A stretch of 63,868 bases of DNA, counting the filler, from Octopus bimaculoides (taxonomy: Eukaryota): assembly GCF_001194135.2 (NCBI RefSeq). It is 5 parts of 5 records of this genome, joined end to end, with 100 filler letters (N's around TTAATTAATTAA, not from the genome) between each part and the next. Parts side by side here need not be neighbours in the genome. Positions count along the whole stretch, not along the records: positions 1 to 14,084 come from NC_069008.1; 4 more parts are not named here. One strand, 5' to 3'. A model generated the notes under the pieces. It made no database searches. It saw nothing but the letters and a program-made list of their open reading frames with translations, and had not been told where the DNA came from. Shown here in pieces: positions 992 through 13,291 of the stretch; position 1 is the first letter of the stretch, and every line of letters begins with the position of its first letter. The translations under genes and the position numbers were made by a program.

Positions 992-1872
992 ATCATAGGT
1001 CTGGTGGATCAGGACTGACCTGGGGCTAGAATGACAGCAACAAGGAAGGACACATTAAATAATGTAGTCCTAGATACACAATGTGTGAGAATAAAAGTGA
1101 GAAGGTCACAGTTAGAACACCTTTGATCATAGGTCTGAGGGATCAGGACTGGCCTGGGGCTAAAACCACAGCAAGAACCAACAATAACAATGAAAGATGT
1201 TCGTTATTGAACTCAGTAATTGCTAATTAATTAGTCAATTATTTCCTCACTCATTTAATAAGTCTCTTGTCTGTTTATCGAAGAGTTATAAGAGACCATC
1301 AAGGGAACTTGCAAGAACACACTGGTTGTCTTTAGTGAAGGTCACACAGGTGATTGTTTCTGGAAGCAGAGATGTTGGAAAATGCATGAAGAGGGATTGC
1401 ATCTGCACCCAAACTATAACAATGTGTAACAAAATTTTAATTTTCTTTTGTCTTTGGTCAGTGAGTGTTATTTCTTATTTTCTTCTGTCTAGAAATCAAA
1501 GGAAATGACTATCATTCCCTTCAAACTTTGCTTTTGTAAAACTGACCTATTTTCCATTACATTTCAGACAGATTCAGCACTGAGTTGCCGAAGCAGAAAT
1601 ATCATTATAGCTAATACTCTGCTCAATACCACAGATTTGCTTGTCAGTTGCTTGACCATAATCACTTTAGCATGACCCTTAGTGGCTGACAATATGTGCA
1701 TCTTTGATGATGAGCAGAAGTAGTGGGGGAGCATTACAGCCTTGTGTTGAGAGGGATTCTTTAGGGCTTGAATAAATGTAACAAAAGCAAAGTTTAAAGG
1801 AAATATTAGTCATTTTTCATACTTCCTTGGACTAAACAAACAGGAAATAACAGTTGCTACCCAAGAACAAAA
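992..1872 (-). repeat. Left arm of ~0.9-kb inverted duplication (partner ~12270-13186)
   Basis: Read by eye, the reverse complement aligns collinearly with 12270-13186 across intron, exon and flanking repeat units. Boundaries approximate. Confidence 0.88.
1251..1359 (-). pseudogene. Antisense pseudo-exon copy of WDR83 exon 12824-12932
   Basis: Reverse complement is 101/109 identical to the exon, keeps ag|...|gtgagg, and has CGA>TAA (…DGLL*LFDKQTRDLLNE). Confidence 0.92.
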
Positions 1873-1953
1873 ATTATATTATATATTGTTATTTCATGGA
1901 TTGATTAATTAACTAATTAAATACTTAAATTTTCTTTTTCTCATGCCAACCAG

Positions 1954-2178
1954 CTGACGGAGAATATTGCATAAGCTGCGGTAGTGACAAGACTTTAAAA
2001 CTGTGGAACCCCTACCGACAGTTACATCTGAAGACATATTCTGGCCATGGTTATGAAGTCCTTGATGCCCACTCAGCCTGCGACAATGCCACACTCTGTT
2101 CTGGTGGTATGGATAAATCGGTGATCCTTTGGGATGTGGCAACAGGGCAAATGAAGAGGAAGTACAGAGGACATGCAG
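1954..2178 (+). CDS. WDR83: WDR83/MORG1 internal coding exon (phase 1 to phase 1)
   Basis: ccag| acceptor, |gtatga donor. Translates xDGEYCISCGSDKTLKLWNPYRQLHLKTYSGHGYEVLDAHSACDNATLCSGGMDKSVILWDVATGQMKRKYRGHA, matching recalled human WDR83 (DGNYCLTCGSDKTLKLWNP...YSGHGYEVLDA...KFRGHA). The upstream exon is not in the window. Confidence 0.95.
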
Positions 2179-2603
2179 GTATGATGGTGGATGTGGTGTG
2201 GTGGTTGTGTTGTGTTAAGGTGATGCTGATTGTGGCTATGTGCTGGGGTTGATGTAATTGACTCATCCCTTCCCCCAAATTTGGGGCTTTGTGGTTCCAG
2301 TAGAAAGGATTATTATTATTGTCATTGGTGAGAATAAGAACAAACTCTGGTTTGTTCTTACTCCTGGTAGAATTTATGTAACGGGTTACTACCTGTAACT
2401 TTAGGTGTCTACAAGCTTTCAACAATTTTTCAAGTGCTTAAGACCTTGGTAATCTTTCCTGTAGAAGCTCTTACAAGACATTCTATTCCAATTTTCTTCA
2501 ACCATTTGTCTATATCTTAACTCACAGTTCCTAATGCACTGTTTATTATAAGCACAACCCTTACAGTTTTCATACTCCATATTCTTGCAATTTCAAATTT
2601 TAA

Positions 2604-2823
2604 CCCTTTAGCATTCAGATTTGTTTGTTAAATGTAATGTTTATTTATTCAAATTGTTTTGAATTAGTCATGCATTACCTTGTAGCTTTGAGATTTCTGT
2701 GATGTGAATGTTTATTTTTTGGATAATATTGTAAGGTAAGTGTGAGAGGCTGGATCTGGCTAGTTTGAAGATAAAATAGGTAGATCATTTTGGCCAGTTA
2801 TGGCCAGTTTAAATACTAAAGGG
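2604..2823. mobile_element. piggyBac-type MITE
   Basis: TTAA|CCCTTTAGCATT...AATACTAAAGGG|TTAA: TTAA target duplication, CCC/GGG ends, 220 bp. Confidence 0.8.
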
Positions 2824-2986
2824 TTAAGGGATTGTATGTTTGTTTTCAGTACTCTTTCTTTGCAATCCTGGAGTTATTATTATTATTATGTTGTATTTTT
2901 TTTCTTCTTTCTTCAAATTTTCTTCCATTTCTTGCCGAGTATTTTCCATTATTATTATTATTATTATTATTATCATTATTATTATT

Positions 2987-3190
2987 GAAGGCAGAATCAT
3001 TAACATGCCAGGCAAGATGCTTACTGGTATTTCGTCTGCTGCTACGTTCTGAGTTCAAACTCTGCTGAGGTCGACTTTGCCTTTAATCTTTTCATGGTCA
3101 ATAAAATAAGTACCAGTCAAAAACTGGGGTTGATATAGTGGACTTAAACCCTCCCCCAAAATTGCTGCCCTTGTGACAGAATTTGAAACC
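2987..3190 (+). mobile_element. SINE family A copy with (ATT)n tail
   Basis: ggcagaatc.ttagca...gagttcaaa.tctgc.gaggtcgactttgcc...aagtaccag...ggggtcgat. Further copies at ~3791-3995, ~4530-4745, ~13612-13748 and ~62225-62280 (-). Confidence 0.8.
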
Positions 3191-3214
3191 ATTATTATTA
3201 TTATTATTATTATT

Positions 3215-3748
3215 GAGTGAGAGAGCAGCACATGCCATCAAAGTGACACTGGAGTACAAATATATGAATCCTAATATACCCATCATGATTACCCATCTGA
3301 TAAGGGCGCACCTGGCTCATGCATCCCAACGAAATGTGTCTGACATGGTGATCTCATATCAAAATAAACAGCACATGATCTTGCAGGTGGGGCCCAGTTA
3401 CAATATTGTTCAGTTCGATTAACCCATCCCGTTTAAAAAGTCTTTGAATAAGGTTTGTTTAAGGATGGTGAATGAAACACCCATATTTCCAGAAGTGAAT
3501 TATTCAAACCCCAAGGAATTCCTCTCAACACATGTCTATGGTATTCCCCCATGTGCATATTGTCAGCCACTAAGGGACGTCCTCAACTGGTTACGGTGAA
3601 GCAACTGATGAGCAAATCTGTGGTATTGAGCAGAATGTTTGGTATAGCCCATCTTGTATACCAAGACAAAACAATGTACATGACAACACTTCCAGTCACT
3701 TAAGATCAGAAGCCATCAGAGCCACTGCCTGGAACTGCATCAGGGCAA
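3215..3748 (-). mobile_element. Non-coding ~530-bp interspersed element (here called X) inserted in (TAA)n
   Basis: Second copy at 4013-4470, fragments at ~1600-1775, ~12370-12545 and 16429-16493. Full copies are bounded on both sides by TAT/CAT repeats. No ORF or tRNA head seen. Confidence 0.7.
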
Positions 3749-4012
3749 TTATTATCATGATTGTTGTTGTTATTATTATTATTATTATTATGGCGAACTG
3801 GCAGAGTCGTTAGCATGCTGGGTGAAATGCTTAGTGGTACCTCACCTATCACTACAATATAAGTTCAAATTCTGCTGAGATCGACTTTGCCGTTCATCAT
3901 TTTGGAGTTGATAAATTAAATATCAGTGAAACACTGGGGTCGATATAATCAACTTGTCCCCTCCTCACAAATTTTGGGCCCTTTGCCAACATTTTAAATT
4001 ATTATTATTATT

Positions 4013-4470
4013 GAGTGAGAGAGCAGCACATACCATCAAAGTGACACTGGGGTGAAATATATGAAGTCCAATATACCCATCGAGACTACCCATCTGATAA
4101 GGGCACACCAGGCACATGCTCCACAACCATATGCGCGCAACATGGTGATCTCATATCAAAATTAACAGCGCGTGACCTTGCAGGTGGGGCCCAGTTAGAA
4201 TTTTCTTCAGAAGCTGAATTATCCATGCCCCAAAGAATTCCTCTCAATGCATGGCTATGATGTTCCCCCACTACTTCTGCTCGTGATCAGAGAAGCACAT
4301 ATCGTCAGCCACCGAGGGTCAAACAACTGACAAGAAAATCTGTGGTATTGATCAGAATATTTGCTGTAACCAGTCTTTTATACCAAGACAAAACAGTGTC
4401 CATGATAACACTTCTAATCAGTTAAGATCAAAACCCATGAGAGCCACTGCTTGGTACTGCATCAGGGCAT
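4013..4470 (-). mobile_element. Element X, second copy (internal deletion)
   Basis: Same ends as 3215-3748 (gagtgagagagcag...gcatcagggca). Confidence 0.7.
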
Positions 4471-4837
4471 TCATCATCATCATCATCATTATTAGTATTA
4501 TTATTATTTTCATCATTATCATCATTGTCAAGGCAACAAGCTGGCAGAATTATTGGCCAGACAAAAGGTTTAGTAGCATTTCTTCCAGATTTATGTTCTG
4601 CATTCAAATACTGCCGAGGTTGACTGGCTTTTCATTCTTTCGGGGTTGATAAAATAAGTACTAGTCAAGTATTGATGATGGTCAGTGGAGTCGACTAAGC
4701 TCTGCTCCAACAAAACCATTTCAGGCCTTGTGCCTATAATAGAAAGGATCATTATCATCATCATCCTCATCATTATTAATTTTATCATCATCATCATCGC
4801 TTTTGTTATTATTTTTATGTCCCTTGAACATCAACAG

Positions 4838-4950
4838 GTACTGTTAGCTGTGTAAAGTTCAATGAGGAGTCAACAGTTATTTTATCTGGTTCCGTCGATG
4901 GAACCATTCTCTGCTGGGATTGTCGCAGCCGAAAGTCAGAACCTATCCAG
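4838..4950 (+). CDS. WDR83: WDR83 internal coding exon (phase 1 to phase 0)
   Basis: caacag|...CAG|gttggt. Translates GTVSCVKFNEESTVILSGSVDGTILCWDCRSRKSEPIQ (human GKVNTVQFNEEATVILSGSIDSSIRCWDCRSRRPEPVQ). Phase matches the previous exon. Confidence 0.95.
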
Positions 4951-5104
4951 GTTGGTTGTTCTACCTCAGTTTTTTACCCCTCACACTTATCTATTTATCT
5001 CTCTATTTGTTTGTCTATCTGCCTTTGCGTCTGTCTGCTTATCTATGCACCCATTTGTCTATCTGTCAATGTCTGTTTATATATTTGTCTCCCTCTTATT
5101 ATCA

Positions 5105-5490
5105 TAAACATCATCATCATCAATATGTTACATCCGTTTTCCATGCTGGTATGGGTCAGACACTTTGACTGGAACTGGTAAGCCAGAGAGCTGCACCAAG
5201 CTCTTGTCTGATTTGGCATCGTTTCTACAACTGGATGCCCTTTCTAGTACCAACCACTCCAAAAATGTAATGGATGCTTTTTATGTGCCACCATCACAGG
5301 TGCCAGTTACGTGACACCAGCATTGGCCATGACCATGATATCACTTGGCTTGACGAGTCTTCTCAAGCATGGCATATTGTCAAAGGCCTTGGTCACTTGT
5401 CACTGTCTCTGTGAGGCCCAACATTTGTAAATCATGCTTTGCCACCTCATCCCATGTCTTCCTGGGTCTACTGCTTCCACAGTTAGAGAT
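5105..5490 (-). mobile_element. 5'-truncated RTE LINE 3' end with (GAT)n tail
   Basis: RPRKTWDEVAKHDLQMLGLTE...LEKTRQAK*, then a 3'UTR ending in the tail. Confidence 0.8.
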
Positions 5491-5589
5491 CAGTATTTCT
5501 TTATACAGCTATCATTTTATATTAGTTTATGTGTGTTATATAAATATATATAAACTCTCTCTCTTTCTCTCTCTCTCTTACACACACAC

Positions 5590-5790
5590 ACACACGTAAT
5601 CATCATCTTCCATGTGGCATAGGTTAGTTGATTTGACAGGATCTGGTGAGCTACAGGGCTGTCTCATGCTCCATGTCAACTTTGGCATAGTTTCTACAGT
5701 TGAATGCCAGTCATAACATCTACCACTTTGCAGTGTGTATCAGATGCTTTTTTTCATACGACCAGCATTAGTAGGGTTGCCAAATAACAT
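5590..5790 (-). mobile_element. RTE-type 3'UTR fragment
   Basis: Similar to the 3'UTR of 5105-5490. Confidence 0.55.
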
Positions 5791-6399
5791 GCAAGACCAG
5801 AAAGAAGAAGAAAAGGAAAAGCTCTTTCAACTAAGTGGGGGAGAAATTGAAGGGTATTTATGCTAGGGACAAGCAGAGGTGGCTTGCTATGGATAAGATG
5901 TATGGCTACTTCACATTTATGTAAGGGCTGGAAGGAGAATCTGGGAAAAAGTTAAGATGGCAGTGATGGGTTGCCAGAGCAAAATGCTTAGGAAGTGAGA
6001 GATAATACAGGCTGTGAATGAGGTGGGGATAGTAATAGATGGCTGGATGCTGGGTTTGAGATGAATGTAATGAATGATGAACAGGAGTGTAAGTGCAGCT
6101 TGATGGGAAATATCAGTGTAGGCCAGGGTTAGTAAGAGAGAGATAAGAGTGGTGCAGGGATGATAGTTGAGAGAGTAAATGATGATGAGCAAGGCATGGT
6201 AGCAGTGGAGAGAAGGAGATGTAGAGGATTGTTGGCAGACAAGAGGGGCTGGCGCTATGAATGATAGCAGATATGTAAGGTGTTAAGATAAAGCATGGCA
6301 GAAGGAATGAAGAGGCAGAATAACATCTGAGAAGAGATGGAAGTGGTGGAGAAAGAAGGGAGGAATTGGTAGCACAAAGAATTAGGAGATGTGGTATGT

Positions 6400-6740
6400 T
6401 GTTACGATCAGACAAATTAATAATGTAAGAAAAAGGGGTAACTTTCTGATCGCAACAACAAAGTGTTCAAACAGGGAAGTAAATGTTCATATATGGAGAT
6501 TAGGTCCAGTCTCAAAGGTTTCAAGGTAAGTGGTGAACGGTCCGACCCGTATGCAGCTCCGTCTCTCGTTCTGGTTCTATTCGCGCCAAGCTCCTGCTGT
6601 CTTCCCCACTCCCCTTTTTAACAGGAAGTACGAGATTACCTGCCTTACTTGTTAACAAGAAGTGAACGAGATTACCTGTCTCGTACTATTGCTAACTTCC
6701 TGTGTATATCTTTGGTTATTCATACCAACGTTATTTCATT
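6400..6740. mobile_element. Possible solo LTR
   Basis: Begins TGTTAC, ends near ..TTTCA, GC-richer than flanks, internal duplication acgagattacctg. No clear target site duplication. Confidence 0.22.
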
Positions 6741-6984
6741 TCTACCAAGCAGTCATTGACAAACGTTTATCTCGCCACCTTTGGAAAATATAGGGTAAGT
6801 TCTCACACTTCATTATCTTATCAGAATACATAACAATGTGTAAAGGAGGGGTGGTTGAGTTGTGGGGAATGCTTAATGGGGCAACATGGGAGTAGGAACA
6901 GTGTCCAGTATGTAGGAGAAGGGGAGGTATGACAGAGCAGTATAGGTGTAGGAACAACATCTAGCAAGTACAAGCATAGGCAGA

Positions 6985-7265
6985 ATTTTTTTAGGATCTC
7001 ATATTTGCTGTTATGAATGGGTGTTGAGCACAGTGAATCACCAATTGTTGTTGTCTTTTGTTAACTCATCCATGAGGCTCACTATCTTGAGATCAGCCTT
7101 CACTACTTCATCCCCTATCTTCTTGGGTATTCCTCTTCCACAAGTTCCATCCATTTTAAGTGACAGGACTTTTTTATGCAGCTGACCTCACCCACAGCTA
7201 TCACATAACCATATCAGCACAGTATTTTCTCTGGCACACTACATCTGATGCCTCTCATACTTATT
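6985..7265 (-). mobile_element. RTE LINE C-terminal fragment
   Basis: RGIRCSV...SCIKKVLSLKMDGTCGRGIPKK..DEVVKADL. Confidence 0.72.
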
Positions 7266-8450
7266 GAAAATATTTGAATGTAATTTCTACTGTACTTCTT
7301 CTTGGAAAGTATCAAAAAAATGGAATATTTTGATACCACATTTGTGGAATTTGGCTGAATATTTTAGGAAATATAAGAATTTGAATGGTCAGCGAGCTGG
7401 TTGAAATTTTGCCTAATTTGTGTAAATGAATAGGTAGCTATATTTGTGATGTCATATCTTTGAAACTGTGATGACAATCATGTTCAAATTACACAAATTA
7501 ATAGTGGCTATGATACAGTAGTTGTCTATTTATTTTTCAGGTTCTTGGAAAGAAAACCTTTTATCTTTGGCAATATTTTAAATATTTATATAAAGCCTAT
7601 TTTGTTATGTAAAACAAATGGTTAGTTTTACAGTGTTTTCAGACCAAACTAAATCTCAAATCACAAGCCATAGAAATTTGAGTTTTGGCATGTTAATAGT
7701 AGGTATGGAGGTAAATAAATCAGGAGATTTTGGGACATGACACCATTTCAATAAAATTCTAACAGATTATTAAAAATGGTTATAAATCACAGAATTTCAG
7801 ATCAGGACGCCCATATGAGTTGTATTTTCTACATTTTGACTGGGATTTCCTCCATTTTTTCTCATCACAGCCTTGGAAATGTTGGGGTAAAGTTTTTTAT
7901 GAAATAAAGTTTTGTAAGATTTGTGATTATTTTTGTTTTACATCCACCCACTGTCCAGAGCAGTTTAGGCCAATTTTTGTTCGCTAGGCAGAAGCCTTTA
8001 TTGCAGGAAAAAACAATTATAAAACTATCTTGAGACAAAAAGGTATGTGATTTAGAGAGATTTAGCTACTGTTTCTAGCACATCCTACAATGACCTGGTA
8101 ACACGCTAGAAACTGCAGCGAAATCTCTCCTTAAATCACTGCTTTTTGACTCAAAATATTTTGATAAATGTTTTTCTTCCTGCTATAAAGGCTTCTCATT
8201 GCTATTAAAGTGCCTAGTGCAAACAAAATTGGTTTGGTGAGGAGAGGGGGTAAAAAAGATCATAAATTTTAAAAAATTTTGTTTCCTAAAACGCACCCCT
8301 CTCTTCATTTTTAAGGCCGCAGTGAAAAAAATAAAATAGGAAAAATTTCCGCAGTGCTCCAGCATGGCCACAGTCTGAAACCAGTAAAAGAGTCAAAATG
8401 AAGAAAATCCAACTTATGTGGGCGTCCTTGTCCAAAACTCACTCCTACAA
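7261..8450. repeat. AT-rich non-autonomous DNA-transposon-like repeat in imperfect fold-back arrangement
   Basis: 7261-8010 is a diverged reverse complement of ~33000-33770, and 8170-8450 resembles ~33020-33300 directly. A ~95-bp hairpin (8046-8141) lies between the arms. Confidence 0.55.
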
Positions 8451-9439
8451 ATAATTAAATGAAATTACAGCTATTGCAAGCATTTAATGTATATCCAGAC
8501 ATGATTATATTGTGATCTGTTACCTGTAGGAGGCTCAGTTTTGATACACTGGTATGAGATATAAAACTGAATCTTCTATAACTTTGGAGCTTTACAATAA
8601 ATTTAATAAGTATCCCTGGAAAGCTCTGTGGAAGGGGTGATGCATGCAATTTGACTATGCAAAAATCCATTGTTTTCATGAAAAAATACCTATTTTCATA
8701 GGGAAAATTATATATCATTTGAAAGTTCTATAGTTTTATTCAAAATCAGACACAAAAAAAAGGAAATGATATATAGGTAGATCAGGAGTAGTGTTGGTGA
8801 ATTTTGGGAAGTGTGGCATTTTTTAAGGATGGAATTGTGTCTTAAGTGTCCTGATAGCTGATGCAGTTAGTTTTATTCCATGCTTCAATGATTCTGGGCA
8901 TGAAAAAAGGCTCAAAAAAGCTGCATAAAAATGCCCATGTATTTTTATGTAGTAATTCATCTCTCTTTCTCTCTCCCATTTCCCCCTTCTCTCTCTGAGC
9001 AAGGAGACACCTCACAGCAATCATTCATGCCATCTTTCTGAGGAAAGCTCTTTCTCTTCAATCTCAGAGACCCTGTAAAGGATCAAGGGTACTGATTTCA
9101 GGCAGTGTTTATCCCCACTTTAACATGTGTGTTTTCTAAGAGACTGCAATTTTAAGTCCAGGAAGACATCTCCTCCAACTGGTTTATTCAGTGCTCTCTC
9201 TGCACTCAATATTTATTGCAAGTGGGAGATAACTCCTGCCATCCTAGCTTTGAGACCACTAAACCATATGATTTCAATCTAATTGGATCTCTTTGGTAGT
9301 GGGCCCCTGTTTGCCAAGCCAGGCAATAGTTTAAACTTGCAATATACAGAAAATACATGTCATACAATCATGTCATACACTGACTTTGTAACTAGCACAT
9401 AAAAATCACCCTTTGAAAGTTGGGTAATATGTTGTGTTT

Positions 9440-9660
9440 GAGAAGATCCGTCAAGCCAAGTGGAATTGTAATCGTGGCTGTAAAAAGCACCCACTACACT
9501 CTTGGAGTGGTTGGTGTTAGGAAGGGCATCCAGCTGTAGAGACCATATCAAATCAGATTGGAACCTAGAGCTGCTCCCCAGCTTACCAGTTTTCAGTGAA
9601 ATCATCCAACCCATGCCAGCAGGGAAAGCGGACATTCAATGATGATGATGATGATGATAG
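9440..9660 (+). mobile_element. RTE-type 3' end with (GAT)n tail
   Basis: cgtcaagccaagtg...ggttggtgttaggaagggcatccagctgtag...ccaacccatgccagc...gatgatgat. A shorter copy sits at ~11815-11900. Confidence 0.7.
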
Positions 9661-10302
9661 TAATAAAACTAGTTTGTTAGAAAATCTATTTGAGATAGAA
9701 AGCAGTATATGAACAACCAAAAGGCAATGTTTATCCCCACTTTAACATGAATGTTCTCTAAGAGACGATGATACAGCAATTTTAACCCCAGGACTTTCTT
9801 CCTGACAAAAAAGAGCAAAAATAAAACAAAATTACTTTCTCTGCTTTGTAATTTCTCCCCTTCACTCTCTCTTTCGTCCTCTTTTCTACTATATCACTAC
9901 TCTCTCTCTCTCTCCCTCCTTCACCTTTCTTTACCTCCTTCCCTCCCTTTTTCTTGCTATGTACCACTCTCTCAAACTCCATACTCTCTCTATCTCTCTC
10001 TCATTCTTTCCAACTCCTCTCCCTCTCTCTCACTCTATCACTCTTTCTAACACCTCCCTCTCACTCTCTACTACTACTACTCTCCCCAACTCCTTTCTCT
10101 CTTTTTCTACCCCTCACCACATCTGACTCCCCCCTTTCTCCTTTTCTCTCTCTATATACCACTCTCTTCTTTCCACTCTCCCTATCACTCTCTCTTTCTG
10201 ACTTTTCCACTCCATGCTTTACCCACTCTCTCTAATTCCTTTCTCTCTCTCTCTCCCTCACCTTTCTTTATACCTCTCACTCTCTCTCTCTCTCATCTTC
10301 AG

Positions 10303-10435
10303 AAACTGAAAGAGGCCAAAGACAGCATCACATCACTGCAAGTATCGGACCATGAGATTCTCTCTGGATCGGCCGATTCTTACATCAGACGCTATGACTT
10401 GCGGATTGGCCGACTCACCTGTGACTACGTTGGAA
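10303..10435 (+). CDS. WDR83: WDR83 internal coding exon (phase 0 to phase 1)
   Basis: Polypyrimidine tract, ttcag|...A|gtgagt. Translates KLKEAKDSITSLQVSDHEILSGSADSYIRRYDLRIGRLTCDYVG (human TLDEARDGVSSVKVSDHEILAGSVDGRVRRYDLRMGQLFSDYVG). Confidence 0.95.
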
Positions 10436-10469
10436 GTGAGTAACCAGTCATTGTTGTTGCTGTTGTTGT

Positions 10470-11070
10470 GCAGCTCCAGATCCCTCCTTATTCAGCAGAT
10501 CTGTGATTAAAGTTGATCCAGCTGTGACCACAGTGTATCTAGGACTACACTATCTAATGTGTCCTTCTTTGTTGTCAAGCAGCCCCAGAACAGTCCTGAT
10601 CCATCAGATTTATGACTAATGTTGATCTGACTGTGCAAAAATTGCTGTCTTCTATTCAGACCTAGTGTATCTCGGACTACACTAACTAATGTGTCCTTCT
10701 TTGTTGTGCAGCCCCAGATTAGACCTGATCCAGCAGATCTGTGATTGAAGTTGATCCAGCTGTGATCATTGTCACCTTTTATTGACATAGTGTATCTAGG
10801 ACTACACTATCTAATGTGGCCTTCCTAGTAGTTGTTGTAACCCTGGTTTGGTCCTAATCCAGCAGCTCTCTGATCAGAGATGTTCCAGCTGTTGTGACCA
10901 TCATGTCTTTTATTCAGGCATAATACATCTAGGACTACATTATCTAATGTGTCCTCTTTTGTTGTGTAGCCCCCCAGCTCAGTGCTGATTCAGCTGACCT
11001 GTGGTCATAATTGTTCCAGATGCGTCTGTCTTTTCTTTTAGAGTATCTCTATGGTGTATCTAGGACTACT
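10470..11070 (+). repeat. ~130-bp tandem repeat, about 5 diverged units
   Basis: Anchor gtgtatctaggactac at 10533, 10665, 10790, 10923 and 11054 (periods 132, 125, 133, 131). Same unit at 992-1165 (-) and 13035-13186. Confidence 0.85.
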
Positions 11071-11325
11071 TTTCACACACCATCATCGGTATATGTAGGT
11101 GTATCTATATGCATGTGTGTAATTTTATGTGTGCGTCAATGTGTGTGTGTGTATTAGGTTTGTATGTGTATTATAGATGCAGACGTAGGTATGTGATAAG
11201 ATGCTTGCTTTCCAACCACATGGTTCTAGGTTCAGTCCTTGAGCAAGTGTTTTCTGAAACCAACTTTGGGCCAACCAAAGCCTTGTGAGTGGATTTGATA
11301 GATGGGAACTGGAAGAAGCCCATTG

Positions 11326-11395
<70 letters not shown>

Positions 11396-11640
11396 AAAAT
11401 CAAAATAAGCAACAAGGATATCCAAAGTTAATGCAGTACAACCGTTTCATACAACTCCATTTATTTAAGCAATGTGAACATTACATCAAATGTAAAATGC
11501 TAATTAATAGTGAATTATTTCCTCACTCATTTAATAATTCTCCTGTCTGATGTAATGTTCACATTGCTTAAATAAATGGAGTGTCATGAAACGATCATAT
11601 TGCATTAACTTTGGATATCCTTGTTGCTTATTTTGATTTT
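11396..11640. mobile_element. MITE-like inverted-repeat element (~93-bp arms) carrying a captured WDR83 exon/donor fragment
   Basis: Arms 11396-11488 and 11548-11640 are near-identical reverse complements. 11515-11549 is the exact reverse complement of 12910-12944. Confidence 0.8.
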
Positions 11641-11735
11641 CATCACCTTATTCTGGGATTGTATGGATAATACCATACTTAATTCTGGTGCCTAAACTTA
11701 AGTACCATATTCACCTTGAATCTAAATTTATATAG

Positions 11736-11811
<76 letters not shown>

Positions 11812-12269
11812 GCCTGGTGCAGCCTCTTGGCTTGCCAGTTCTCAGTCAAACCATCCAACCCATGCCAGCATGGAAAGCAGACGTTGATGACAGTGTTGAT
11901 GTTTTTACATCCCCATAACTTAGCAGTTGGGCAAAAGAGACTGATAGAACTAGGCTTAAAAAAATTAGTCCTGGGGTCAATTCATTCGACTCAAAACTCT
12001 TCAATATGATGCCCCAGCTTGGCCACAGTCAAATGACTGAAACAAGTAAAAGATGAAAGATGTATGTATCTGTATATTATGTGTATAATGTATACGCAAT
12101 GTGTACGTGTACATAAATGTGTATGTGTACATGTACATAAATGTGTATTTGTACATGTACATAAATGTGTATGTGTGTAGATACCTATTTGTGTGTATGT
12201 GTCTGTGTGGGTGATGTGTATGTGTTTGAATGTGCATAAGGTATATGAATGATTACACTGTGTAATGTG

Positions 12270-13186
12270 ATTTTTGTCCTAATGTAGCAACTGTTATTGC
12301 CTATTTGCTTACCATTAGAAAGTATGAAAAAATGGCTAATATTTCCTTCAAACTTTGTCTTTGTTAAATTTATTCAAACCGCAAAGAGTCCCTCGTAACA
12401 CATGGCTATCATTCTCCCCAACTGCTCCTACTCATCATCAGAGATGCAGAAATTGTCAGCCATAAAGGGACATGCTCAAGCAGTTAAGGTCAAATAAATA
12501 ACTGACAAACAGATCCGTGGTATCGAGCAGAATATTTGCTATATTTGTGATATTTCTGCTTCAGCAACTCAGCACTGAATCTGAAATGTAATGGAAAATA
12601 GGTCAGTTTCAGAATATTGATGTCCAGGTTACAAAAAAGCAAAGTTTGAAGGGAATAGTAGTCATTTCCTTTGATTTCTAGACAGAAGAAAATACGAAAT
12701 AGCACTCACTGACCAAAGACGAAAAAAAAAATTAAAAAATAAAATAAAATTTTGTTACACAGCATTATAGTTTGGTGTAGATGCAATCCCTCTTCATGTA
12801 TTTTTCATCAACTCTGCTTCCAGAAACAATCACCTGTGTGACCTTCACGAAAGACAACCAGTGTGTCCTTGCAAGTTCCCTTGATGGTCTTTTACGACTC
12901 TTTGATAAACAGACAGGAGAATTATTAAATGAGTGAGGAAATAAGTTACTAATTAATTAGCAGCTATTTAGTTCAATAATGAACATCATTCATTGTTATT
13001 ATTGTTTGTTGCTATTGTTGTTGTTGTTGTTGTTGTCATTTTAGCCCCAGGCCAGTCTTGAACTGTGACCTTCTCACTTTTATTCTCACACATTGTCTAT
13101 CTCGGACCATATCATCTACTGTGTCCTTTCTTGTTGTTGTCGTTTTTTAGCCCCAGGCCAGACCTGATCCAGCAGACCTACGATCA
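12270..13186 (+). repeat. Right (source) arm of the inverted duplication, containing the functional exon
   Basis: See partner 992-1872. Confidence 0.88.
12824..12932 (+). CDS. WDR83: WDR83 internal coding exon (phase 1 to phase 2); last one visible before the scaffold spacer
   Basis: cttccag|...GA|gtgagg. Translates KTITCVTFTKDNQCVLASSLDGLLRLFDKQTGELLNE (human SPITCTCFSRDGQCTLVSSLDSTLRLLDKDTGELLGE). C-terminal exons were not found. Confidence 0.93.
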
Positions 13187-13291
13187 ATTTAATTACCTCT
13201 CTCTATTCCATGCTCCTTCCACATTCAACAGCCTCTCATAATAGTACTTCCATGCCACTTTCTTCTCTTCTATATCAATAGCATGTATGTC

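What the first reader, a model, noticed from the sequence alone, without database searches (positions are those of the whole stretch)
992..13186. 0.9-kb intragenic inverted duplication gives a WDR83 coding exon a full-length antisense partner in its own pre-mRNA
Seen: 992-1872 is an inverted copy of 12270-13186, including a pseudo-exon (1251-1359) with 8 differences in 109 nt and a CGA>TAA stop. Four of the 8 differences would be G-U wobbles, so 105/109 exon positions can pair. The copy lies in the intron upstream of exon 1954, so both arms are co-transcribed. Established: long intramolecular dsRNA is the ADAR substrate, and coleoid cephalopods recode mRNA extensively. Inference: this could be an exon-complementary sequence made by local duplication rather than by SINE pairs. 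Caveats: the arms are ~11 kb apart, and both A:C mismatches put the A on the intronic arm.
Basis: partly seen in the sequence, partly recalled or inferred. Interest (0 to 1): 0.72.

Follow-up and report, generated by a model that had tools for sequence, protein, structure and literature searches.

The report
Old inverted exon copy in octopus WDR83
An octopus gene (WDR83) carries, in its first intron, an old, decaying backwards copy of one of its own exons; the copy could pair with the real exon in the RNA, but it evolves like junk and sister species have lost it, so it is probably a harmless duplication rather than an RNA-editing device.

Summary
Window 992-1897 is an inverted copy of 12245-13184 (87.8% identity). 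It contains an antisense copy (1251-1359) of the 109-nt WDR83 exon at 12824-12932. There are 8 differences, a CGA>TAA stop, and 105/109 positions can pair (-175.6 kcal/mol).

The window is Octopus bimaculoides CM046628.1. Exon 1 lies upstream of the window, so the copy sits in intron 1 and is co-transcribed.

The copy is not a mis-assembly. O. sinensis and O. vulgaris carry an orthologous piece of the same left arm upstream of exon 2. Site patterns place the duplication before the split of these species.

The functional reading, an ADAR exon-complementary sequence, has no support.
- The pseudo-exon changes at the same rate as its intron-derived flanks.
- Wobble-preserving changes do not outnumber A:C changes (32 vs 36).
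- O. sinensis and O. vulgaris have lost the pseudo-exon part.
- Argonauta and Sepia have no copy.
- The partner lies three introns and 11.5 kb away.

No RNA data were available, so editing itself is untested.

A new finding: a second, 53-nt antisense copy of the exon/5' splice-site junction (11498-11549) sits in the loop of a strong hairpin, 1.36 kb upstream of the exon.

Verdict: an ordinary, neutrally decaying intragenic inverted duplication that offers a useful natural experiment.

The parts
992..1897 (+). Left arm: an inverted copy of 12245-13184 lying in WDR83 intron 1. On the transcribed (+) strand it reads antisense to the right arm.
   Evidence: 763/869 ungapped positions identical (87.8%), collinear over the whole length. 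Its end is 56 nt upstream of the 3' splice site of exon 2.
1251..1359 (-). Pseudo-exon: a disabled copy of coding exon 5. It reads sense on the minus strand and so is antisense in the pre-mRNA.
   Evidence: 101/109 identical to 12824-12932, with CGA>TAA stop, G>R and E>D. Six of the changes map to this copy.
12245..13184 (+). Right arm (the source): the 3' part of intron 4, exon 5 and the 5' part of intron 5.
   Evidence: Orthologous in O. sinensis and O. vulgaris, where TE insertions interrupt it.
12824..12932 (+). Real WDR83 coding exon 5 (K)TITCVTFTKDNQCVLASSLDGLLRLFDKQTGELLN(E), 109 nt.
   Evidence: canonical AG/GT sites, in frame with the other exons, conserved in O. sinensis, O. vulgaris, Argonauta and Sepia.
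1954..2178 (+). WDR83 coding exon 2.
4838..4950 (+). WDR83 coding exon 3.
10303..10435 (+). WDR83 coding exon 4.
11498..11549 (+). Second, short antisense copy of the exon 5 / intron 5 junction. It is the reverse complement of 12910-12962: the last 23 nt of the exon plus 30 nt of intron, including the 5' splice site.
   Evidence: 50/53 identical, E 6.5e-18. The duplex alone is -74.4 kcal/mol. Absent from the other four species' loci.
11393..11643 (+). Hairpin in intron 4 with 96-nt arms (11393-11488 / 11548-11643, 92% complementary). Its 59-nt loop carries the short antisense copy.
   Evidence: I5. MFE -132.3 kcal/mol, z = -21.7.
10463..11028 (+). Array of a repeat of about 130 nt in intron 4. 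Units of the same repeat form the outer ends of both arms (992-1160 inverted, about 13040-13184 direct).
   Evidence: families D6, D7 and D10; I9.
1606..1775 (+). Dispersed-repeat fragment inside the left arm. It has closer inverted partners at 3551-3646 and 4219-4321; the right-arm equivalent is 12366-12543.
   Evidence: I6, I7, D15, D16.

Best explanation
This is an old intragenic inverted segmental duplication in Octopus bimaculoides WDR83. About 0.94 kb (the end of intron 4, coding exon 5 and the start of intron 5) was copied in reverse orientation into intron 1, ending just upstream of exon 2. This happened in an ancestor of O. bimaculoides, O. sinensis and O. vulgaris. Since then the copy has decayed as neutral DNA. 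It gained a stop codon, two missense changes and several indels, and in the O. sinensis/vulgaris lineage the part carrying the pseudo-exon was deleted.

Both arms are in one pre-mRNA and could in principle form a very stable long-range duplex. Any ADAR editing, splicing effect or back-splicing that this causes is most likely an unselected by-product, not a device kept for recoding exon 5.

Shown: the structure, its position in intron 1, its age relative to speciation, its neutral substitution pattern and its loss in sister species.

Inferred: the mechanism of origin (replication template switching or break repair), and the idea that pairing in vivo is weak because intron 1 can be spliced out long before exon 5 is transcribed.
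For: Structure.

Location in the transcript:
- The window equals L001 12131-26214 of O. bimaculoides CM046628.1 at 100% identity.
- Exon 1 is at L001 10001-10090 and exon 2 at L001 14083 onwards.
- The left arm (L001 13122-14027) therefore lies inside intron 1.

Not an artefact:
- The arms differ by 12% and by many indels.
- A true gap-edge artefact in the same record (exon 1 duplicated across a 10-N gap) is 99.5% identical over 209 nt.
- The long-read assemblies of O. sinensis and O. vulgaris carry the orthologous inner part of the left arm (window 1430 to about 1830) at the same place upstream of exon 2.

Age:
- In the inner region 16 sites group both left copies against both right copies, and 0 sites group by species. 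bimL-sinL p = 0.050 against bimL-bimR p = 0.117.
- In the outer region that carries the pseudo-exon, L=R!=sinR is 11 and L=sinR!=R is 12. This symmetry means there has been no recent gene conversion.
- Both regions give about 6% divergence per lineage since the duplication, against 3.5-4.9% since the species split.

Neutrality:
- The pseudo-exon has 6/109 changes on its branch and its flanks have 19/245 (p = 0.51).
- The 8 exon differences resolve into 6 changes in the copy and 3 synonymous changes in the real exon.
- G:U 32 against A:C 36 over the arms.

Loss:
- Exon 5 has a single copy in the O. sinensis, O. vulgaris, Argonauta and Sepia loci.
- In O. sinensis the left arm stops at a truncated TE.
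Against: - No RNA data were examined, so a lineage-specific function in O. bimaculoides cannot be excluded.
- The duplex would be extremely stable (-175.6 kcal/mol for the exon, -1163 kcal/mol for the arms).
- In human pre-mRNAs the enrichment of editing sites in conserved complementary regions did not depend significantly on their spacing up to 10 kb (PMC8052449). The 11-kb distance alone therefore does not rule out pairing.
- O. bimaculoides kept the pseudo-exon and also carries a second, 53-nt antisense copy of the same exon junction. Two copies are a coincidence that a purely neutral account does not predict.
- The neutrality tests rest on few sites (109 nt of exon).
- The outer part of the left arm (992-1428) is known from one short-read contig only.
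Confidence: 0.72

Rival explanations
1. One reading: the left arm acts as an exon-complementary sequence. It pairs with exon 5 in the unspliced pre-mRNA, ADAR deaminates exon adenosines, and WDR83 is recoded in a way specific to O. bimaculoides.
For: - Both arms are co-transcribed.
- 105/109 exon positions can pair, in helices of 11-27 bp.
- Exon 5 has 35 adenosines, and 22 of them would recode if edited.
- Coleoids edit heavily, and the role of introns in coleoid editing is an acknowledged gap (PMC8891338).
- Long-range pairs are edited in human (PMC8052449).
Against: - No conservation or covariation: neutral rate, no wobble excess, and loss in O. sinensis and O. vulgaris.
- The partner is three introns and 11.5 kb away, whereas genome-wide screens look within +/-2 kb (PMC9989829).
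- Intron 1 can be spliced as soon as exon 2 exists.
- Both A:C mismatches, the favoured ADAR context by established knowledge, have their A on the intronic arm.
- A near-perfect 109-bp duplex would be edited promiscuously, not site-selectively.
- WDR83 is not named in the editing supplements that could be searched.
- Consensus cuttlefish transcripts show no recoding of this exon.
Confidence: 0.1
2. The arms act on splicing rather than on editing. The left arm in intron 1 pairs with the intronic part of the right arm (12245-12823, intron 4). This loops out exons 2-4 (471 nt) and promotes back-splicing into a circular RNA or skipping of these exons.
For: - The geometry matches. The left arm ends 56 nt before the exon 2 acceptor, and the intronic right-arm part lies 1.8 kb after the exon 4 donor.
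- Complementary regions are enriched outside back-spliced exons in human (PMC8052449).
Against: - No back-splice reads were examined.
- circRNAs are reported to be low overall in octopus (PMC9699675).
- Substitution is neutral and there is no wobble excess.
- The inner left arm has closer competing inverted partners at 3551-3646 and 4219-4321.
Confidence: 0.08
3. The inverted copy, or at least its pseudo-exon part, is an assembly error in the short-read O. bimaculoides contig.
For: - The window is a single 14,084-bp contig bounded by N gaps, with the arms about 0.9-1 kb from each end.
- The same record has a gap-edge duplication of exon 1.
- No independent O. bimaculoides assembly could be found.
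Against: - The arms are 12% diverged with indels, so the left arm is a distinct genomic sequence and not a re-used copy.
- The inner half is confirmed at the orthologous position in two independent long-read assemblies.
- Inner and outer halves are collinear with the right arm and give the same age.
Confidence: 0.03
4. The inverted duplication is a hairpin-RNA locus: the long duplex is diced into endogenous small RNAs that target WDR83 itself.
For: About 0.9 kb of 88% complementary arms in one transcript. By established knowledge, inverted duplication of target-gene sequence is the proposed origin of plant MIR genes and of Drosophila hpRNAs.
Against: The loop is 10.3 kb and contains three exons. 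No small-RNA data were examined. Rfam gives only sub-threshold, low-complexity microRNA-like hits elsewhere in the window. The copy decays neutrally and is lost in sister species.
Confidence: 0.03

Closest known systems
Exon/editing-site complementary sequences of site-selective ADAR targets (e.g. GRIA2 Q/R and R/G sites, Gabra-3 I/M, Drosophila ion-channel genes)
   Same: An intronic sequence in the same pre-mRNA is complementary to a coding exon and could form the dsRNA that ADAR needs.
   Different: - Known ECSs lie in the adjacent intron, usually within about 2 kb, and pair imperfectly over tens of nt.
- They are conserved together with the exon.
- Here the partner is three introns and 11.5 kb away and covers the whole exon almost perfectly.
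- It arose by duplication, evolves neutrally and is lost in sister species.
- Editing is untested.
Inverted SINE/Alu pairs that give promiscuous hyper-editing
   Same: Two long, imperfect inverted copies in one transcript. This is the commonest class of ADAR substrate in animals, octopus included (PMC9989829, PMC9699675).
   Different: The arms are unique gene sequence and one arm contains a coding exon. The spacing (10.3 kb) is several times the usual range.
Intronic complementary sequences flanking circRNA-forming exons
   Same: Inverted complementary sequences lie in the introns on either side of a block of exons (exons 2-4).
   Different: The complementarity runs on into an exon and the next intron. 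No back-splice evidence exists.
Hairpin-RNA and MIR loci born by inverted duplication of target-gene sequence (plants, Drosophila hpRNAs)
   Same: An inverted duplicate of a gene fragment gives a transcript that can fold back on sequence identical to the parent gene.
   Different: The duplicate lies inside the parent gene's own intron. The arms are far apart and no small RNAs are known.
Ordinary intragenic segmental duplications and pseudo-exons
   Same: A copy with exon and non-coding flanks collinear, a disabled reading frame, neutral divergence, and presence or absence that varies between species.
   Different: Nothing essential. The inverted orientation inside the same transcription unit is what gives it pairing potential.

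Membership tests
ADAR exon-complementary sequence (ECS) | Intronic sequence complementary to the edited exon, on the same strand of the same pre-mRNA | tested here: met
   (105/109 positions pair). Searches place the copy in intron 1, downstream of exon 1.
ADAR exon-complementary sequence (ECS) | A-to-I editing of the exon that depends on the intronic element | not testable with these tools
   No O. bimaculoides RNA reads or transcripts were reachable. WDR83 is absent from the searchable editing supplements.
ADAR exon-complementary sequence (ECS) | Conservation or covariation of the ECS with the exon across species | tested here: not met
   The pseudo-exon is absent in O. sinensis, O. vulgaris, Argonauta and Sepia. 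Its rate is neutral. G:U 32 against A:C 36.
ADAR exon-complementary sequence (ECS) | Location in an intron adjacent to the edited exon, within a few kb | tested here: not met
   The left arm is three introns and 11,464 nt from exon 5. The separate 53-nt copy at 11498-11549 does meet this feature: it is in intron 4, 1.36 kb away.
Inverted-repeat hyper-editing substrate | Two inverted copies of at least about 100-300 nt in one transcript | tested here: met
   Arms of 906 and 940 nt, 87.8% identical.
Inverted-repeat hyper-editing substrate | Arms within the range used to call intramolecular dsRNA (about +/-2 kb) | tested here: not met
   10,347 nt lie between the arms. The criterion is taken from PMC9989829.
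Inverted-repeat hyper-editing substrate | Clusters of A-to-G mismatches in RNA on both arms | not testable with these tools
   No RNA data.
circRNA-promoting flanking complementary introns | Inverted complementary sequences in the introns on both sides of the circularised exons | tested here: met
   The left arm is in intron 1. Right-arm positions 12245-12823 are in intron 4. Exons 2-4 lie between them.
circRNA-promoting flanking complementary introns | Back-splice junction reads | not testable with these tools
   No RNA data.
Neutral intragenic inverted segmental duplication with pseudo-exon | Collinear homology across the exon and its non-coding flanks, with a disabled reading frame | tested here: met
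   (CGA>TAA stop).
Neutral intragenic inverted segmental duplication with pseudo-exon | Substitution pattern of the copy indistinguishable from its non-coding flanks | tested here: met
   6/109 against 19/245, p = 0.51.
Neutral intragenic inverted segmental duplication with pseudo-exon | An orthologous copy in related species that dates the event, with lineage-specific decay or loss | tested here: met

The most novel reading that the evidence does not exclude
In O. bimaculoides, exon 5 of WDR83 is edited or recoded in a species-specific way because the gene carries antisense copies of its own exon. One is the full copy in intron 1. The other is the 53-nt copy displayed in a hairpin loop 1.36 kb upstream, which also covers the 5' splice site. 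That would be an exon-complementary sequence born by inverted exon duplication. O. vulgaris and O. sinensis, which keep the intronic part of the arm but lack both exon copies, would serve as natural knock-outs.
Probability: 0.1. Interest if true: 0.7.

Novelty: new member of a known kind. Interest (0 to 1): 0.3.

Why it matters
Taken alone it is an ordinary structural relic. Its value is as a test case. Studies of coleoid recoding have mostly ignored introns (PMC8891338). Here three closely related octopuses differ cleanly:
- O. bimaculoides has a full-length antisense partner for a coding exon, plus a short partner nearby.
- O. sinensis and O. vulgaris keep only the intron-derived part of the same arm.
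- Argonauta and Sepia have nothing.

Existing DNA and RNA reads from these species could show directly whether an intronic complement 1-11 kb away is enough to create editing in an octopus exon, and whether such structures drive back-splicing.

Tried and rejected
- Exact look-ups of four window ORFs, including two that cross the pseudo-exon, found no independent contigs. No second O. bimaculoides assembly or transcript was available.
- A first protein search with exon 2 alone returned only fragments at 73% identity or less over the full query, none from a cephalopod. The four-exon query was needed.
- Supplements of three editing or genome papers do not name WDR83 or MORG1. The two key O. bimaculoides editing papers (Cell 2017, Cell 2023) are not held.
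- Rfam gave only sub-threshold microRNA-like hits on low-complexity TG/TA tracts and on the hairpin. ARAGORN found no tRNA. TRF found nothing at score 150 or above.
- Gene conversion between the arms was considered, because BLAST identities suggested that the paralogues were closer than the orthologues. A proper alignment rejected it: 0 sites group by species and 16 group by arm.
- The idea that the pseudo-exon was added later to a shorter ancestral copy was rejected. The outer and inner parts give the same age, and the O. sinensis arm ends in a truncated TE.
- Folding 11300-13200 cannot show the loop-exon pairing, because that pairing would be a pseudoknot with the hairpin stem.
- Cuttlefish WDR83 transcript variants look like species differences, not editing.
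- My Sepia exon extraction was out of register and was not used.

Full report
**Observation.** The inverted repeat is real.
- The repeat finder reports five collinear inverted pairs between 1030-1892 and 12252-13144.
- A gapped alignment joins them into 992-1897 against 13184-12245, with 763 matches, 106 mismatches and 108 gap columns, i.e. 87.8% identity.
- The real exon is 12824-12932 (109 nt, canonical AG and GT). Its antisense copy is 1251-1359.
- RNA cofolding pairs 105/109 exon positions in helices of 25, 17, 27, 25 and 11 bp at -175.6 kcal/mol. The whole arms cofold at -1163 kcal/mol, against -444 kcal/mol when folded separately.

**Gene and organism.**
- The window holds four in-frame WDR83 exons on the + strand: 1954-2178, 4838-4950, 10303-10435 and 12824-12932.
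- Their translation is 99% identical to O. bimaculoides WDR83, 98% to O. sinensis and 90% to Argonauta hians.
- The window is 100% identical to L001 12131-26214, which is O. bimaculoides CM046628.1:6,664,409-6,678,492.
- It is one contig bounded by N gaps.
- Mapping the 309-aa O. sinensis protein shows seven coding exons. The window's exons are numbers 2 to 5.
- Exon 1 lies at L001 10001-10090, about 2.1 kb upstream of the window.
- The left arm is therefore inside intron 1, and both arms are in one primary transcript.

**Not a mis-assembly.**
- The arms differ by 12% and by many indels, so the left arm is a separate genomic sequence.
- A real gap-edge artefact in the same record, exon 1 duplicated across a 10-N gap, is 99.5% identical over 209 nt.
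- The long-read assemblies of O. sinensis (L002) and O. vulgaris (L004) carry the inner part of the left arm (window 1430 to about 1830) at the same place, upstream of exon 2 and in the same orientation.
- The outer part (992-1428) rests on the one O. bimaculoides contig. It is collinear with the right arm and gives the same age as the inner part (see below).

**Evolution.**
- In a six-sequence alignment of the inner region the two species' left copies group together: bimL-sinL p = 0.050 against bimL-bimR p = 0.117.
- Sixteen sites separate both left copies from both right copies. None separates the species.
- In the outer region, sites where the left arm agrees with the O. bimaculoides right arm only (11) balance sites where it agrees with the O. 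sinensis right arm only (12). This is expected if the duplication preceded the species split and no recent gene conversion occurred.
- Both regions give about 6% divergence per lineage since the duplication, against 3.5-4.9% since the split. One event therefore produced the whole arm.
- Exon 5 has only one copy in the O. sinensis, O. vulgaris, Argonauta and Sepia loci.
- In O. sinensis and O. vulgaris the left arm stops at the position equivalent to window 1428-1430. In O. sinensis it abuts a truncated copy of a TE there. The same family has inserted independently, with a 7-bp target duplication, into the O. sinensis right arm.
- The simplest history is a deletion that removed the pseudo-exon and the outer repeat units in that lineage.
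- Argonauta and Sepia show no copy at all. This fits a later origin, but loss cannot be excluded.

**Is there selection for pairing?**
- With O. sinensis, O. vulgaris and Argonauta as outgroups, the 8 exon differences resolve into 6 changes in the pseudo-exon (the stop and both missense changes among them) and 3 synonymous changes in the real exon.
- On the branch leading to the left arm the pseudo-exon has 6/109 changes and its well-aligned flanks have 19/245 (Fisher p = 0.51).
- Across the arms, transitions that keep a G:U pair on the transcribed strand (32) do not exceed those that give A:C (36). There are also 38 transversions.
- The higher identity of the exon segment (92.7% against about 87%) is what coding constraint on one partner alone would give.
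- The copy therefore behaves as neutral DNA.

**Would the arms meet in the RNA?**
- 10,347 nt, containing exons 2-4, separate the arms. The pseudo-exon is 11,464 nt from exon 5.
- The left arm ends 56 nt before the acceptor of exon 2, so intron 1 can be removed soon after exon 2 is made and long before exon 5 is transcribed. This is inference from general knowledge of co-transcriptional splicing.
- Genome-wide calls of intramolecular dsRNA use +/-2 kb (PMC9989829).
- Against this, in human genes the enrichment of editing sites in complementary regions did not depend significantly on spacing up to 10 kb and rose sharply for stable pairs (PMC8052449). Pairing cannot be excluded.
- The inner left arm also has nearer inverted partners, at 3551-3646 and 4219-4321.
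- If pairing occurs, a near-perfect 109-bp duplex should be edited promiscuously. Exon 5 has 35 adenosines, 22 of them recoding.
- The two A:C mismatches, the context ADAR prefers, have their A in the intron.
- In octopus most editing is in introns and 3' UTRs, and circRNAs are rare (PMC9699675). The role of introns in coleoid recoding is an acknowledged gap (PMC8891338).

**A second antisense copy.**
- Window 11498-11549 is the reverse complement of 12910-12962, which is the last 23 nt of exon 5 plus 30 nt of intron 5 including the donor site. Identity is 50/53, E 6.5e-18.
- It is the 59-nt loop of a hairpin with 96-nt arms (11393-11643; -132.3 kcal/mol, z = -21.7). It lies in intron 4, 1.36 kb upstream of its complement.
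- The loop-junction duplex alone would be -74.4 kcal/mol. It would be a pseudoknot with the stem, so nested folding cannot score it.
- The element is absent from the other four species' loci. No other WDR83 exon has extra copies in the window.
- A 12-nt perfect palindrome, CTAATTAATTAG, lies at the edge of this homology, 20 nt after the donor site.
- One possible origin (inference only) is a break at the centre of a palindromic element repaired with a templated insert from nearby.
- This copy fits the usual ECS geometry better than the 11-kb partner does, and it would mask the 5' splice site.

**Verdict.** The functional part has no support from sequence evolution and could not be tested with RNA data. 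The best account is a neutrally decaying intragenic inverted duplication, older than the O. bimaculoides / O. sinensis-vulgaris split, whose dsRNA potential is incidental. It is a new example of a known kind. It is modestly interesting, because the three octopus species form a ready-made comparison for testing intronic complements in cephalopod editing.

Noticed in passing
window 11393-11643 (loop 11489-11547; copy 11498-11549): A strong hairpin in intron 4 carries in its loop a 53-nt antisense copy of the exon 5 / intron 5 junction, including the 5' splice site.
   Followed up: partly
window 12953-12964 and 1222-1233: A perfect 12-nt palindrome, CTAATTAATTAG, sits 20 nt downstream of the exon 5 donor, at the edge of the 53-nt copy's homology. 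Similar TTAATTAA motifs lie at the inner end of the left arm (about 1905-1925). This may be a hot spot for template switching.
   Followed up: no
L001 9724-9932 and 9943-10151: WDR83 exon 1 and its flanks are present twice, 99.5% identical over 209 nt, on either side of a 10-N gap in the O. bimaculoides record. This looks like a gap-edge assembly artefact.
   Followed up: yes
L001 26215-27400 (just after the window end): Coding exon 6 (residues 225-262) is not found in the O. bimaculoides locus and probably lies in the 1,186-N gap. This would explain why the RefSeq model XP_014773291.2 is 274 aa rather than 309 aa and has an odd ...LLNDCHQAETK... junction.
   Followed up: partly
window 10463-11028; also 992-1160 and about 13040-13184: An array of about 4.3 units of a repeat of about 130 nt lies in intron 4. 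Single units of the same repeat form the outer ends of both arms, so the duplication boundary lies in this repeat. TRF did not report it at score 150 or above.
   Followed up: partly
L002 17252-17668 and L002 10958-11097: In O. sinensis a 417-nt TE with a 7-bp target duplication has inserted into the right arm. A truncated copy of the same family abuts the truncated left arm about 55 nt from the equivalent site. These are two independent hits in near-identical targets.
   Followed up: partly
L002 24037-24177 and 24946-25086: The last coding exon of O. sinensis WDR83 appears twice, both copies 100% identical to the protein, about 0.9 kb apart. It was not examined whether this is a real tandem duplication or an assembly artefact.
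   Followed up: no
window 2948-3413 vs 3754-4210, and 3490-3790 vs 4208-4513: Intron 2 contains repeated blocks of about 0.8 kb period (72-83% identity) made of dispersed-repeat pieces. Fragments of the same elements occur inside both arms.
   Followed up: no
window 5173-5283 and 9481-9591: An inverted pair of SINE-like elements (111 nt, 79% complementary) lies 4.2 kb apart within intron 3. It is another potential dsRNA of the ordinary kind.
   Followed up: no
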